This document shows positions 1-7,495 of a DNA stretch of 64,000 nucleotides, one piece after another (position 1 is the stretch's first letter; every line of letters begins with the position of its first letter). This DNA comes from Adineta vaga (taxonomy: Eukaryota > Animalia > Rotifera). The notes beneath the pieces are model-generated. The model searched no databases and was not told the origin of the DNA. It saw only the letters and a program-made list of their open reading frames with translations. The DNA lies in NCBI GenBank assembly GCA_021613535.1, contig CP075495.1:15066001-15130000 (forward strand), written 5' to 3'. A program made the translations under genes and the position numbers.

Positions 1-523
1 TGCCAAATGACAATATTCTTCACTGGAAGTGACACTTAACGGTTACTTTTTAAAAAAAAATTTTTTCTTTTCCGATTCAAAAACCATTATTTCTCACGCC
101 TCAAGTACTAGTATCAATTATATAATGGTAAAATTTTATGCAAAAAGTAATTACTTCTGACAAGCAACTATAAAGTGCCACCACTTTTTTTTACGCAGAT
201 AATTTGAAAGAAAAAAAATCACTGTTTACATAGAAAACTCAGGACATCAAAAGCAAATAATAGTAGACTCAATTCTTTTTTTTTCTCGCACCTTCTCTTC
301 GATAACTTTGTGAAGGAAAATGAAAAAACTCTTTATGAAAACCTAGACTATCTGGATGAGACAATGTCGTCAATAATTAATTCACTGTTTTGCTGCGTTG
401 TTTGTAAAGTGTTTGTTCTCTTCAGTTTGTTTTTGTATGACACTGGGAAAAAACTGACATAATTAAAGGTATAAAAACACTATCAAACGTCCATTTCTTA
501 TCATTGTTGAAAGATAACAGAGT

Positions 524-1642
524 ATGGCTTCAAATCAAGAACCTAGAGACTACTACGGTCCAAATCGTCGACCACGATCAAATTATAATACTAATAATTC
601 ATATGGAAGAGGACGTAACAGCAATCGAGGATCATTTCAAAGTCACCCTCATCATTACGAAAGTGATTCAAGATCTGAAGAATATATGTCCGATCAGCAA
701 AATCATCGAAGACAACGCCAGTTTGATAATTCTTCAACAGTTGAACTAAAACCAATTGATGATGACAAAAAAGCTTATGCTGTGAATCTTCAACTAGACC
801 CAGTTGAAATGGGTATCATAGCTCGAAATAATCGGTGGCATCAAGAATTCAAAGGTTTAGGCGCATTTAATCGTTATTTTGGTTTATTATCATCAGAACA
901 TGGTTTTGGTTATACACTTCCTGATATTTGGGATGGTTATTTTCATATAACACTTGCTAAATTTACTACTAAAATATCAGCGGAAAAACTCAAAGATAAA
1001 TTTCAACAATTTCGATATCCGATTGAAACGATTCCTTATATTCCGGATGTTGTTTTCCATACATCAACTATTGAAAGAATTCCGGGACCAAATCGTGGCA
1101 GAGGTCGAGAGAACATTGATTTTATTGTCTTGCCTATTGACATTACTCCTGAAGTTCAAACATTTTATGAAAGGATTCAATTATTACTTGATGCAATTAA
1201 AGAACTAGCCGGCAATCCAGAAGATTGGATCACAACAGAACTTAAGAAACTTCATGTTACTATAAGAAAATATTCAAATATTGATTATAATCTTTATCCA
1301 CTAAATAATATTCGAATTCAAGAATTTCCACTCGAATTTCGATGTTCATATGTCGGTGTTCGAGAACCACGAGACACAACAATTAATCGAATCATGCAGA
1401 ATGAAGATTTGTTTCGTGAATGGTTGTCTGGTGTAACTGAAATCCAGAGACATTGTTCAGGCTGTCAAACATTAATTACAACAAGGGATTGGCAAGGTTT
1501 CTGCTTTGCATGTGGAAACTACGAAATTATTAATCCTCTTTGGTCAAGTTTCGGTAATAATTCTAGTTTACGTCAAATTCAGCAAGCAAATTCTGAAAAT
1601 AGTGTTCTAAATCAATTAGTTGAAAATATATCTCTGAAATAA
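524..1642 (+). CDS. 2H phosphoesterase-like protein with C-terminal Zn ribbon (paralog 1)
   Basis: Intronless 372-aa ORF. Two HxT motifs (GYFHITLAKF, LHVTIRKY); C-terminal CSGC...CFAC; N-terminal R/G/N/S low-complexity region. Confidence 0.72.
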   Translation: MASNQEPRDYYGPNRRPRSNYNTNNSYGRGRNSNRGSFQSHPHHYESDSRSEEYMSDQQNHRRQRQFDNSSTVELKPIDDDKKAYAVNLQLDPVEMGIIARNNRWHQEFKGLGAFNRYFGLLSSEHGFGYTLPDIWDGYFHITLAKFTTKISAEKLKDKFQQFRYPIETIPYIPDVVFHTSTIERIPGPNRGRGRENIDFIVLPIDITPEVQTFYERIQLLLDAIKELAGNPEDWITTELKKLHVTIRKYSNIDYNLYPLNNIRIQEFPLEFRCSYVGVREPRDTTINRIMQNEDLFREWLSGVTEIQRHCSGCQTLITTRDWQGFCFACGNYEIINPLWSSFGNNSSLRQIQQANSENSVLNQLVENISLK

Positions 1643-1899
1643 TCCTTCATTAGCATATCAAAACTAAAAAAACTTTAACTTTATTCTGATTCAAACCTAT
1701 GGTTTTTTATTAAAAGAAGAATTAAAAAAGATATTTGGTTAAAGAATGAAATATTACTATTTATGATAGTAATCGCTTTCTTTCGCATGAAACTCATTAA
1801 TTGATTCAAATTGATTATGAGGCAAATTATAATAAATTCCACTTCGATTTCTGTTTACTATTTTATTTGATATAAATCAATTTCATTTTCTAGATTAAC

Positions 1900-2952
1900 A
1901 TGTCTAACAATAAGAGAAACAAAAAATATACACAAGACGCTGACGGTTGGAATCATCCTAATTCAAATGTCGAAGATAATACATGTACAACGAACAAGTC
2001 TTCTACTGATCCGGTGACTAGCACATCAAAACAAATTGATTATAATTATACAGTCACTTTACGTGTAGCACCAGTTGAACACGGTATAAAATGTTATAGT
2101 TCACCTTGGCATACTCATCAGTTCACCGGTATCAACGCTTTTAATTATTATTTTGATTATCTATTGTCGAAAGAAGAAGGTTTTACTTTACCGAATGTGT
2201 GGGATGGATATTTCCACGTGACTCTTGCTAAATTTCGACTTGATCCCAAGAGCAATCTTGAAAAAACAGAAAATGATTTGGTTATGCGTATCAAAGAGAA
2301 AGTCTTAGGTTCGAATCAACCTTCTTTTAAAAGAATCTTTCCATGCAGATTCAGAAGTGATGCACTCAACGTACACTCAGGTTCTGGGCGACATGCTGAG
2401 GCGGAAAATATCGATTTTGTTACATTGAATATAGTGGATCTTGAAAATGCTTTTGATAAACTACGTCCATTCCTTGACAATATTGAAGATGCAGTTAAAG
2501 CAGCCCATGGTATTTGGCAGTATAAACCATCTGAGAGCTATTTCACACAAGCACACGTTACCGTACGAAAATATAAACCAGACGACGATCTTCAAGATTG
2601 GTCATATAATCATATAAGACAATATCTTGTTGAACAACGCGTAAAAGATAATCCATTAGAATTCCAATGTGTAGCACTCGATATTGCACAAACTCGTCGA
2701 CAGGCTCGTCATCGAGGAACACAAACACAATGGTGGGCTGGTGTGACAGGAAATTTTCTAGATTGTGCCACATGTGGTACACAATTTAACGACGAATCTA
2801 AAGGTACTTGCGTAAAATGCCATACCAGAAGACAAATGTATGAATGTTCTGGATGTGGAAAAAAAGGAAATGAAGGGAAAATGTGGCCAGGATATTGTAA
2901 TAATTGTGGTAATTACGAACGTCTTAGACCTTTATGGTCCACCAAACCATAA
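1900..2952 (+). CDS. 2H phosphoesterase-like protein with double Zn ribbon (paralog 2)
   Basis: 350-aa ORF. WDGYFHVTLAKF and AHVTVRKY motifs; CATC/CVKC/CSGC/CNNC. Shares blocks AFNxYF, ENIDF, PLEFxC and CGNYE..PLWS with 524..1642. Confidence 0.72.
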   Translation: MSNNKRNKKYTQDADGWNHPNSNVEDNTCTTNKSSTDPVTSTSKQIDYNYTVTLRVAPVEHGIKCYSSPWHTHQFTGINAFNYYFDYLLSKEEGFTLPNVWDGYFHVTLAKFRLDPKSNLEKTENDLVMRIKEKVLGSNQPSFKRIFPCRFRSDALNVHSGSGRHAEAENIDFVTLNIVDLENAFDKLRPFLDNIEDAVKAAHGIWQYKPSESYFTQAHVTVRKYKPDDDLQDWSYNHIRQYLVEQRVKDNPLEFQCVALDIAQTRRQARHRGTQTQWWAGVTGNFLDCATCGTQFNDESKGTCVKCHTRRQMYECSGCGKKGNEGKMWPGYCNNCGNYERLRPLWSTKP

Positions 2953-4144: not shown

Positions 4145-4790
4145 TTATTCATTAGTCTGATTAATTGACATATTTGTTGCTTTTTGATTGAGTTCAGTTA
4201 GTTTTTTATCGTAGGCTGATTTCAACATATTATCGAGTTTTTTGTACTGTTTATTTTCGATTTCAGTCCAGAGTTGTTGTAATTGTTCAAGTGTTACACA
4301 ACGCCTGACCTTTCTACAATAATTAAATTGTTCAATAGTTTCAGGCGGCACTGCTTCCGAACCAGTTAATTCACATGATGTTTCATTACATAGAAATGGG
4401 ACATCCTCAACATTAATTCTTTGATGAAATAGTTTTAAACCCGATCTTTTTTCAAGATCCTTAATTGATACTGCAAAATCAGTTAATGGACGATTTCGAT
4501 CAATTGGTTCATTTGGTACAACTAAATTACATTTGAATAAATGAGTAGGTACATGGACTTCATTCGGACCAATAACTGCATGTGTCATTTGTTTGCAGGG
4601 AATATTTAAATCATTGTTATCCTTCTAAATATATATATATATATAAATATATATAAAAGATTGAATTTTTAAAATGACTATGTATTTTAATAAAATCACC
4701 TTTTCTTTGCCCTCGACGGGAATAAACAAAGAGCCAGTTATAATATGAACAAAATCAAATTTTTGCAAACTTATATTGTGTGAAATGAAT
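4145..4790 (-). pseudogene. EndoG/EXOG-like non-specific endonuclease, 3' fragment
   Basis: FDFVHIITGSLFIP, VIGPNEVHVPTHLFK and PLTDFAVSIKDLEKRSGLKLF match the C-terminal half of the family. No DRGH catalytic segment was found upstream. Confidence 0.6.
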
Positions 4791-6343
4791 TTTCCTCGGT
4801 ACCATCGTCTCTCTGTCTGGTCTATTCTTTCATGCATCTTTTTCTTCTATTATTTTCTCTTGATACATTCCATGCTAGTACATTTGGTTTCTACATCATT
4901 TTCAAGCATCATTTGCATAGTAGAGAATCCTCATTTAAATTTAATACGTCCAATCCTTACAAATATAATTTAACACATTGTCGGACAGATTTAGATTATC
5001 ATTTGTGAAAATACAGTTTATGCGGTAATGACAGGAGATTCATTCTTACATTCTCGTCATGATGTTATAATATGTACACTTGAGGTAACATTACACCCAT
5101 CGAGTTTTATTTTTTTGATGAAATATCATTTCACAGTCGTTTACCTTTTCGTAATGTAATTCCTAATGAAATAAAACATCCTCCAGATCGTGATGTAATG
5201 ATTACTGAAAAGATCAGTCAAAGTAACGATAAAAATAAAAATGAAATTGAATGGATGATGATACATTTGTTTCTCTATCAAATTTTAATTTATTAGTTTC
5301 TCAACATGATGCTAGACTTTTACTTATGAAACATATGAAGTTGGCTTTTGTGGTGGGGCCAGATATCTTTTTTTCAAAATTGTACCTGTTTGTATTCAAA
5401 ATCATACAAAAATTCAATTTATCGATAGAAAAGAGTTTAATTTTCAATCACCAGAGTTTTATTCAAATGAATTAGGATATGAAGCATTTATGAAAGCACA
5501 TTAATCTATTCGATTATTCTAAATAACAAAGTTTGAAAATGTTTTGAATGATTGAGTTATATATTCAAAATATACTAAGCATTTTTCTTCATCAGGTTAT
5601 GAATCTACAAAATATCAATGAAGTATCACCCATGAATGTCCTCTATTCTCATTCTATAAGACACAGAACGAATGAAAAAATAAAGTTCATGTTCGTTTCT
5701 ATCACAATCATTTTACTCCATCAGTTACTATGTTTACGATAACATATGAAAGTATACATCATGCAGTTCATATGAATGGCGCAGCCGCTATCGTTGTATC
5801 GTTCTTGGTCTGCACCTTACATTTAGTGATGAATGTGAACGAACAGTTATGTAGACATACCCATTAGAAATGATCCCACACAATATTTGCATTTTGAACA
5901 AATGTATCCAAAAAAACAATTCCTAGTTATTATATGCTGTAAATCAATAGTTTGGATTTAGTGGACGTCGTCGAAATGATATATTCGCTTTACTGACCAT
6001 CAAATATAAAGTGGTACCGTAGAGCGTTTTATTTTTTGTTTGCTTGTAGAATTAATCTGATATTGAAATAAAAAATTTGAACTTTTCTAATTCATTACGA
6101 TTTCAAATTCAAAAAAAAAGAACATTTTGTTCGATAGATGATTTTATTATTGATGTTTGATGACATTCACTACAAATAATAACCCTTGATATCTTATCAT
6201 AAAAGAAAAGAGCAAAGACATTTTACCAAATAGATTACTATTTATTTCTTTTTCATCAAAGCTTATCTTTGAAGTAGAAAAGACAAAGAAAAAAAACTTC
6301 ATTTGTTCTTATTTCATTTCTATTTGAGTACATAATAAGGGTA

Positions 6344-7495
6344 ATGTCTACGTCACATAATCTACGACATTTAATTGATATTGCTGATCATCTAAGCAAT
6401 CGTTTATCATCTCTTGAACCATCTTCATTAGAACAATTAGAACAATGGCGTCAAACAGCATATCGTACGATTGATGAATATTGTGAACAAAAACGTCATG
6501 ATTTAATTGAAAAAAAACAAATTCATGAACAACGTGAAGTCGATCTTCTTCGATCACGAATTACACATTTAATCGATCGACATGATCAAAGTGAAGAATC
6601 TTATAATTCAATTCATCATGATCTTCAATTAGCTGAAATCAAAATTAATGAACTTGAACATCAAAGATTTACACTTCGTCCTTTCAATATTCAGGATGAA
6701 CATTTTATCATTCGTCGACGTCTTTTTCCATTATCAAATCCATATCAATCAATTCATTTAAAAGCTGGTTTAGAAAGTGCACTTGGTACAAATGATAAAC
6801 ATCTTCTTGTTGATCGAGAAGGAAAAGATTTATGTCTACTTGATCGAAATTTAACATTGATCGAAGAAATTCCTTTTATTCATAATGGTATCCATGGAGT
6901 ATGTTGGTCATCAACAATGTCACGTTTTATCATAATAACATTTAAAGAAATTCTTTTACTTGATGAAAAATCAATGAAATTAGAACGATGTTCTATCGTA
7001 CCTGCAAAAAATGATTGGTGGCGTGGCACATGCTCAAATGATACTCTATTTCTTTCTACAGTTGAATGGGGTTCATCAATTTATGAATTTCAACTAGGTG
7101 GTTCATTTAAATTAATGAAAGAATGGCATTCACCTATAACATGTGGAAAACATGAAATTATATGTGATTTAAAATATAATAATGGTTTTCTTGGTATTCC
7201 GATTTATAATAAAAATAAAGAAGATAGTCGATTTGAATTACGTTCAATTTCAACTATGGAAACGATTTGGTCTGCTCGTATTCATGGACGATGTCGTTGT
7301 TGTTCAATTGATGTTGATCAATGGCTTGTTATGGATCATGATGATTGTCGATTTTTTCATATATCAGCTGATGGAAAACTTTTAGAAGCAAATAAATATG
7401 ATCAACATGAACGATTAGAAGATATTATTCCATGGGGCAATGATGATATTGTTGTATTAACAAAGAAAAGTATTCATTTACATAAACTGGCTTGA
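6344..7495 (+). CDS. Uncharacterised protein: N-terminal coiled coil plus probable beta-propeller
   Basis: Intronless 383-aa ORF. Helical N-terminus, then beta-rich W/C/D-containing blades. Confidence 0.7.
   Translation: MSTSHNLRHLIDIADHLSNRLSSLEPSSLEQLEQWRQTAYRTIDEYCEQKRHDLIEKKQIHEQREVDLLRSRITHLIDRHDQSEESYNSIHHDLQLAEIKINELEHQRFTLRPFNIQDEHFIIRRRLFPLSNPYQSIHLKAGLESALGTNDKHLLVDREGKDLCLLDRNLTLIEEIPFIHNGIHGVCWSSTMSRFIIITFKEILLLDEKSMKLERCSIVPAKNDWWRGTCSNDTLFLSTVEWGSSIYEFQLGGSFKLMKEWHSPITCGKHEIICDLKYNNGFLGIPIYNKNKEDSRFELRSISTMETIWSARIHGRCRCCSIDVDQWLVMDHDDCRFFHISADGKLLEANKYDQHERLEDIIPWGNDDIVVLTKKSIHLHKLA

What the first reader, a model, noticed from the sequence alone, without database searches (positions are those of the whole stretch)
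524..2952. Tandem pair of an unrecognised 2H-phosphoesterase + Zn-ribbon family
Seen: two diverged intronless paralogs conserve precisely the two HxT motifs (FH[I/V]TL, HVT[I/V]R), a long upstream block and C-terminal CxxC pairs (one ribbon in paralog 1, two in paralog 2). Known: paired HxT/S motifs define 2H phosphoesterases (LigT, USB1, AKAP7, ASCC1, viral 2',5'-PDEs, Acb1), which act on 2',3'-cyclic or 2'-5'-linked nucleotides. Inference: this architecture matches none of those I recognise, and could be a new RNA-end or cyclic-nucleotide processing or immune enzyme family.
Basis: partly seen in the sequence, partly recalled or inferred. Interest (0 to 1): 0.85.

Follow-up and report, generated by a model that had tools for sequence, protein, structure and literature searches.

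The report
Rotifer RNA enzyme beside cap methylase
Bdelloid rotifers have their own, undescribed family of two-histidine RNA-phosphate-cutting enzymes with a zinc finger built into the fold, and in all eight named species examined its gene sits next to an extra mRNA cap-methylating enzyme, which suggests that the two work together on RNA ends.

Summary
Confirmed. Both intronless ORFs (372 and 350 aa, Adineta vaga) are real, probably transcribed and under purifying selection. AlphaFold models of both match 2H phosphoesterases (AKAP18, ASCC1, Usb1, LigT; Z about 10) at 9-18% identity; no curated family recognises them. Correction: the Zn ribbons are inserted inside the 2H domain, before its last strand, not appended. 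Every named homologue is bdelloid; none was found in bacteria, archaea or viral contigs. New: a third copy 11.6 kb upstream (noted earlier by this scan, s1-490006) lies head-to-head with a CMTR2-like cap 2'-O-methyltransferase (G-patch, WW; nearest non-bdelloid kin fungal). This pairing holds in eight named bdelloid species, three times over in Rotaria sordida, while outer neighbours change, and an A. steineri 2H copy has captured the methyltransferase's G-patch and WW. Best reading (0.4): a 2'-OH-dependent RNA-end phosphodiesterase coupled to cap methylation. Rivals: 2-5A or cyclic-nucleotide breakdown; RNA repair with passive linkage. Substrate untested.

The parts
524..1642 (+). Paralog 1 (type a): low-complexity R/G/N/S-rich head, 2H phosphoesterase domain with one inserted Zn ribbon, short tail
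524..775 (+). 84-residue poorly conserved head with a short xRPxS/G motif and RG/GR dipeptides; probably disordered (inference)
944..955 (+). First H-x-T-hydrophobic motif of paralog 1 (H141, T143), at the start of a predicted strand
1253..1273 (+). Second motif of paralog 1 (H244, T246) followed by invariant R-K-Y
1454..1513 (+). Single Zn ribbon (two CxxC) inserted before the last 2H strand
1514..1543 (+). Closing strand of the 2H fold (G-x-Y-E ... P-L-W), aligned to the C-terminal end of LigT, AKAP18, ASCC1
1900..2952 (+). Paralog 2 (type b): 2H domain with a double Zn ribbon insertion; type b also in A. ricciae, R. sordida and an unnamed bdelloid
2215..2226 (+). First H-x-T motif of paralog 2 (H106, T108)
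2554..2574 (+). Second motif of paralog 2 (H219, T221) with R-K-Y
2764..2907 (+). Two Zn ribbons (four CxxC) inserted before the last 2H strand
1..1545 (+). Part of a 1.78 kb stretch (starting 233 bases before the window) that is 99.2% identical to the third copy 12.2 kb upstream; that copy (G000:C2:15054351-15055460) faces the CMTR2-like gene head-to-head, outside the window

Best explanation
A bdelloid-specific family of catalytically intact 2H phosphoesterases that acts on RNA ends in the same pathway as the neighbouring cap 2'-O-methyltransferase. Shown here: 2H fold, intact HxT/HxT tetrad, ribbon insertion, conserved gene pairing. From established chemistry (Usb1, Acb1): one histidine deprotonates a ribose 2'-OH, which attacks the adjacent phosphate, and the other protonates the leaving group, through a 2',3'-cyclic phosphate, without metal. 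Inferred: the Zn ribbon(s) and the invariant W, R and K residues shape an RNA-binding surface next to the cleft; the two genes are co-expressed from a divergent promoter; the enzyme cuts or trims RNA ends, and 2'-O-methylation by the partner, which removes the nucleophile, would protect the marked nucleotide. Types a and b probably differ in substrate reach; a His-lacking type c is a non-catalytic offshoot.
For: Fold. Tetrad intact in 44 of 53 rows, with 8 degenerate and 1 fragment. Gene pairing with the FtsJ/G-patch/WW methyltransferase seen in DNA for A. vaga, A. ricciae, Rotaria sp. Silwood1, R. sordida, Didymodactylos carnosus and an unnamed bdelloid contig, and by neighbouring accessions or equal contig lengths for R. 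socialis, R. magnacalcarata, Rotaria sp. Silwood2, A. steineri. Three separate pairs in R. sordida; identities of the two genes track each other over 13 pairs (Spearman 0.94). Across the named genera no other gene within the loci is shared. A. steineri 2H copies carry a G-patch and a WW taken from that methyltransferase (WW region about 90% identical); in human CMTR1 these modules bind DHX15 and the Pol II tail (PMC6071836 and own knowledge). 2'-OH chemistry: PMC6265477, PMC9117128.
Against: Adjacent genes are co-inherited and co-duplicated whether or not they work together, so the mirrored trees are not independent proof, and no genome-wide synteny baseline was measured. The fungal relatives of the methyltransferase have no 2H gene within their 14-16 kb contigs, so the methylase does not need it. 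No conserved promoter element was found across genera. The fusion is seen in one species, and the G-patch of one copy is drifting. No 2H protein is known (to me) to act at the cap.
Confidence: 0.4

Rival explanations
1. A phosphodiesterase for immune signalling nucleotides (2'-5' oligoadenylate or cyclic dinucleotides), like AKAP7, rotavirus VP3-CTD, coronavirus NS2 or Acb1; the ribbon acts as a lid. Cap 2'-O-methylase plus 2H PDE would then repeat the kit that rotavirus VP3 carries in one chain.
For: AKAP18 is among the tied top structural matches. A. vaga has an OAS-like nucleotidyltransferase. The 2H gene evolves faster than its neighbours (dN/dS 0.38-0.50 against 0.16; 76% against 95% identity between two Rotaria species), as conflict genes do. 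VP3 precedent: PMC8406329. Lids arose repeatedly in viral 2H PDEs (10.1101/2025.08.21.671373).
Against: No STING domain found and only two Mab-21 genes (the STING blank has no positive control). The OAS-like gene is on another chromosome. A. vaga already has AKAP7-family genes. Viral PDEs score lower (Z 6-8) than cellular RNA-processing ones. G-patch and WW capture point to RNP substrates.
Confidence: 0.25
2. A general 2',3'-cyclic phosphodiesterase for RNA end healing after desiccation or radiation (LigT/CPDase-like); the neighbour is a passenger on a shared divergent promoter.
For: LigT and CPDases are in the same structural band. A. vaga induces RNA ligases after radiation (PMC10809525). 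Head-to-head pairs are often kept without shared function (own knowledge).
Against: No ligase or kinase among the neighbours. Several LigT-like genes exist elsewhere. Does not explain the ribbon insertion, three subtypes, fast evolution or the G-patch/WW capture. No expression data could be tied to these genes.
Confidence: 0.25
3. A non-catalytic nucleotide- or RNA-binding adaptor built on the 2H fold.
For: Eight homologues have lost one or both motifs yet keep the ribbon; a trypanosome mitoribosomal subunit is among the best structural matches.
Against: All four catalytic residues are invariant in types a and b, including both window genes.
Confidence: 0.07

Closest known systems
AKAP18/AKAP7 central domain (2vfk) and ASCC1 PDE domain (8tly, 8tuk)
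   Same: 2H fold over the whole domain (Z 10.1-10.7, 186-200 residues aligned, rmsd about 4 A), two H-x-T-hydrophobic motifs
   Different: 9-13% identity; no AKAP7_NLS match; no KH or RII-binding part; motifs 103-113 residues apart against about 80; Zn ribbon insertion; separate AKAP7-family genes exist in A. vaga
Usb1 (5uqj, 5v1m, 6pfq)
   Same: 2H fold (Z 8-9.5); model for 2'-OH-dependent cleavage of RNA ends
   Different: HxT rather than HxS; no HVSL match; the USB1 gene of A. vaga is on another chromosome
LigT / RNA 2',3'-cyclic phosphodiesterases (4qak, 1vgj, 2d4g, 5h7f)
   Same: Same topology, including the closing strand (Z 8-9.5); weak Pfam hits below cut-off in a few members (best E 0.004)
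   Different: About 80-120 extra residues, inserted ribbon(s), no prokaryotic homologue found
Rotavirus VP3 (capping enzyme with C-terminal 2',5'-PDE), coronavirus NS2, Acb1, poxvirus cGAMP PDE
   Same: 2H core (Z 6-8); VP3 also joins a cap methyltransferase to a 2H domain
   Different: Cellular genes, separate ORFs, CMTR2-type methylase, no viral homologue or viral context found

Membership tests
2H phosphoesterase superfamily | Two H-hydrophobic-S/T-hydrophobic motifs | tested here: met
   Invariant in 37 homologues; definition from PMC11214414
2H phosphoesterase superfamily | Bilobed 2H fold with the motifs on central strands | tested here: met
   Both models: each His opens a strand; top 20 structural matches are 2H proteins
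2H phosphoesterase superfamily | The two histidines face each other in the cleft at catalytic distance | tested here: inconclusive
   Implied by whole-domain superposition; atomic coordinates were not returned
2H phosphoesterase superfamily | Metal-independent phosphoesterase activity | not testable with these tools
   Needs an assay
AKAP7/ASCC1 (PF10469) | Profile match above cut-off; KH or RII-binding partner domain | tested here: not met
   No hit at this locus; seven hits elsewhere in the genome
USB1 (PF09749) | HVSL profile match, orthology | tested here: not met
   Single hit at C3:7082259, not here
LigT / 2'-5' RNA ligase (PF02834, PF13563, TIGR02258) | Profile match above cut-off | tested here: not met
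   Best E 0.0037 in 4 of 36 members, none for the window genes
Viral 2',5'-PDE / Acb1 | Sequence match or viral context | tested here: not met
   No relative in IMG/VR or PHROGs; Acb1 profile E 0.08 in one member
Viral 2',5'-PDE / Acb1 | Cleavage of 2-5A or cGAMP | not testable with these tools
   Needs an assay

The most novel reading that the evidence does not exclude
An RNA counterpart of restriction-modification in an animal: the acquired cap 2'-O-methyltransferase marks the rotifer's own transcripts, and the linked 2H enzyme, whose chemistry needs a free 2'-OH, cuts RNA ends that lack the mark (foreign or faulty RNA). The two genes stay together and duplicate together because they are a mark and its reader.
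Probability: 0.12. Interest if true: 0.92.

Novelty: new variant of a known kind. Interest (0 to 1): 0.66.

Why it matters
It adds an undescribed branch to the 2H superfamily, with Zn ribbons built into the fold, invisible to Pfam, NCBIfam and PHROGs. Its class-wide pairing with an extra cap 2'-O-methyltransferase gives a concrete test of whether animals can read the cap-proximal 2'-O-methyl mark with a nuclease. It also bears on how bdelloids, in which no STING domain was found here, tell self from foreign RNA or repair RNA after drying. If the linkage proves passive, it is still a new enzyme family, of moderate interest.

Tried and rejected
Sequence searches of PDB, Pfam, NCBIfam, PHROGs gave nothing at cut-off. 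No relative in viral or prokaryotic contigs; the fish proteins P0050 and P0059 are repeat artefacts. The ESM Atlas gave only LigT-like leads at 0.81-0.83. The A. steineri '2H-PCIF1 fusion' (P0055) was rejected as a fusion: the 2H ORF is complete in the DNA and the PCIF1 part starts 2.6 kb further on; only adjacency remains. A conserved non-coding element or small RNA between the methylase and the 2H gene was sought and not found. Co-transfer of both genes from Endogonales fungi is unsupported: no 2H ORF on two fungal contigs. Published expression tables could not be tied to these genes: files are cut and gene numbers do not map. The first tblastx synteny run was too noisy and was redone. The 2002 classification paper was not held.

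Full report
Observation. The window holds two + strand ORFs, 524-1642 (372 aa) and 1900-2952 (350 aa), 30% identical. The genome is Adineta vaga, a bdelloid rotifer (100.8 Mb in 6 contigs; source name of the nearest protein). In 37 aligned homologues H141, T143, H244, T246, the R-K-Y after the second motif, four cysteines and several W, G and R residues are invariant. Contigs from three runs guessed to be RNA lie over the ORFs with no joint and stop outside them, while a DNA-like run covers everything: both genes are intronless and probably transcribed. For paralog 1 most signal cannot be told from the upstream copy, but one run holds its own 3' end. Against A. ricciae, dN/dS is 0.38 (paralog 1) and 0.50 (paralog 2), compared with 0.16 for a neighbouring gene: purifying selection on fast-evolving genes.

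Fold. No library names the proteins. AlphaFold models are confident (pLDDT 88.4 and 89.1), and in both the top 20 structural matches are 2H phosphoesterases: AKAP18 (Z 10.7), ASCC1 (10.1-10.4), a trypanosome mitoribosomal subunit (10.2-10.3), Usb1, LigT and CPDases (8-9.5), viral PDEs and Acb1 (6-8), at 8-15% identity (Foldseek agrees). The top rows are tied, so the fold does not name a substrate. The alignments run to the end of each model and end on the last strand of LigT, AKAP18 and ASCC1, with about 190-200 residues aligned in both paralogs although paralog 2 has 39 more. So the Zn ribbons are an insertion before the closing strand of the 2H domain, not a tail. Their place relative to the cleft could not be inspected because coordinates are not returned; a lid-like or RNA-binding role is inference.

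Distribution. Every named homologue is bdelloid: Adineta, Rotaria, Didymodactylos. Unnamed ones come from metagenomes and sequencing runs; one divergent example sits beside an intron-rich ABC transporter gene 77% identical to A. vaga's, and two (P0042, P0046) have no assignable host. Nothing was found in GTDB genomes or IMG/VR (pattern-based searches of limited reach). A. vaga has USB1, AKAP7/ASCC1-type and LigT-like genes elsewhere, so these are not their orthologues. There are three copies, all at this locus, none on another chromosome. The tree (quick method) shows type a (one ribbon), type b (two ribbons; paralog 2) and a His-lacking type c; 44 of 53 rows keep both motifs. The a-b tandem is old: it is also in A. 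ricciae, an unnamed bdelloid and R. sordida.

Neighbourhood. The third copy, 11.6 kb upstream of the window, is 99.2% identical over 1.78 kb but has its own homologous tail, which suggests an older duplicate homogenised by recent conversion (inference). A remnant of the methylase lies 4 kb before the window, so the module was probably duplicated whole. The same pairing is seen in DNA for A. ricciae, Rotaria sp. Silwood1, an unnamed bdelloid and R. sordida (head-to-head) and Didymodactylos (two 2H genes between two methylase genes), and by neighbouring accessions or equal contig lengths in R. socialis, R. magnacalcarata, Rotaria sp. Silwood2 and A. steineri. R. sordida has three separate pairs. 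Over 13 pairs, identities of the two genes are correlated (Spearman 0.94), paralogous pairs included. Between the named genera no other gene in the loci is shared; only the unnamed contig and one A. steineri locus also share RNase T and TPR neighbours. In A. steineri, 2H copies end in a G-patch and a WW domain copied from the methylase with its catalytic parts left out. Caveats: linked genes share history whatever they do; no genome-wide baseline was measured; the fungal methylases have no 2H neighbour; some 2H copies lie away from a methylase. The spliced A. vaga methylase was handled exon by exon; the joined step was left out.

Mechanism. 2H enzymes act on 2',3'-cyclic, 1'',2''-cyclic, 2'-5' and 3'-5' phosphodiesters (PMC6265477). 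Usb1 and Acb1 use one histidine to activate a ribose 2'-OH against the neighbouring phosphate; a 2'-O-methyl group removes that nucleophile (chemical inference). With an intact tetrad, conserved basic and aromatic residues, Zn ribbons, and a partner that 2'-O-methylates cap-proximal ribose, the most likely reading is an RNA-end phosphodiesterase in the same pathway as the methylase (0.40); its sharpest form is a mark-and-reader pair (0.12, included in that figure). A signalling-nucleotide PDE is the main rival (0.25): AKAP18 is a top match, A. vaga has an OAS-like gene, the genes evolve fast, and rotavirus VP3 joins capping and 2-5A cleavage in one chain (PMC8406329); against it, no STING domain was found (no positive control). 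RNA repair with passive linkage is as likely (0.25). A non-catalytic role is unlikely for these two genes (0.07).

Known and new. It works like a 2H phosphoesterase and meets the superfamily's sequence and fold criteria; it fails membership of USB1, AKAP7/ASCC1, LigT and the viral families. Literature searches found no description of it, in a library that lacks most subscription journals. Verdict: a real, new, bdelloid-restricted 2H family with an unusual ribbon insertion and a conserved link to a cap methyltransferase; new variant of a known kind; interest 0.66. Substrate, co-function and origin remain untested.

Noticed in passing
window 4145-4840 (-) and L006:6158-7330 (-): Endonuclease G-like gene (PF01223) upstream of the window, with a partial 91% identical duplicate just after paralog 2; not present at the A. 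ricciae locus.
   Followed up: partly
G000:C5:9523083-9524414 (L072:1042-2373): Intronless 443-aa OAS-like nucleotidyltransferase (OAS1_C over cut-off; human OAS1 E 2e-4): bdelloids may make 2'-5' oligonucleotides.
   Followed up: partly
P0236 (A. steineri, 1734 aa): A copy of the cap methyltransferase is annotated as joined to an ADP-ribosyltransferase; may be a gene-model artefact.
   Followed up: no
L017:9872-14425 (A. steineri): His-lacking 2H copy lies 2.6 kb before a PCIF1-like (cap m6Am methyltransferase family) gene, with an adenosylhomocysteinase gene upstream; a second cap-related neighbour, seen in one species only.
   Followed up: partly
L020:4236-19579 (A. steineri): RNase T-family exonuclease and DcpS scavenger decapping genes flank the 2H-G-patch-WW fusion and a His-lacking copy.
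   Followed up: no
L035:3994-7263, L036:10001-13351, L018:117-3182: The Endogonales and Didymodactylos methyltransferase genes are single-exon although fungal neighbours are intron-rich; direction of transfer is open.
   Followed up: no
window 6344-7495 (+): 383-aa intronless gene with a coiled-coil start and no Pfam match, 82% identical and syntenic in A. ricciae; used as dN/dS control.
   Followed up: partly
L004:7843 to L005:1902 (-): LINE-like element (gag-like and reverse transcriptase ORFs) between duplicated F-box gene and methylase 3' ends.
   Followed up: no
L070:12833-13902 (R. sordida): His-lacking type c copy split over two reading frames between intact type a and type b genes.
   Followed up: partly
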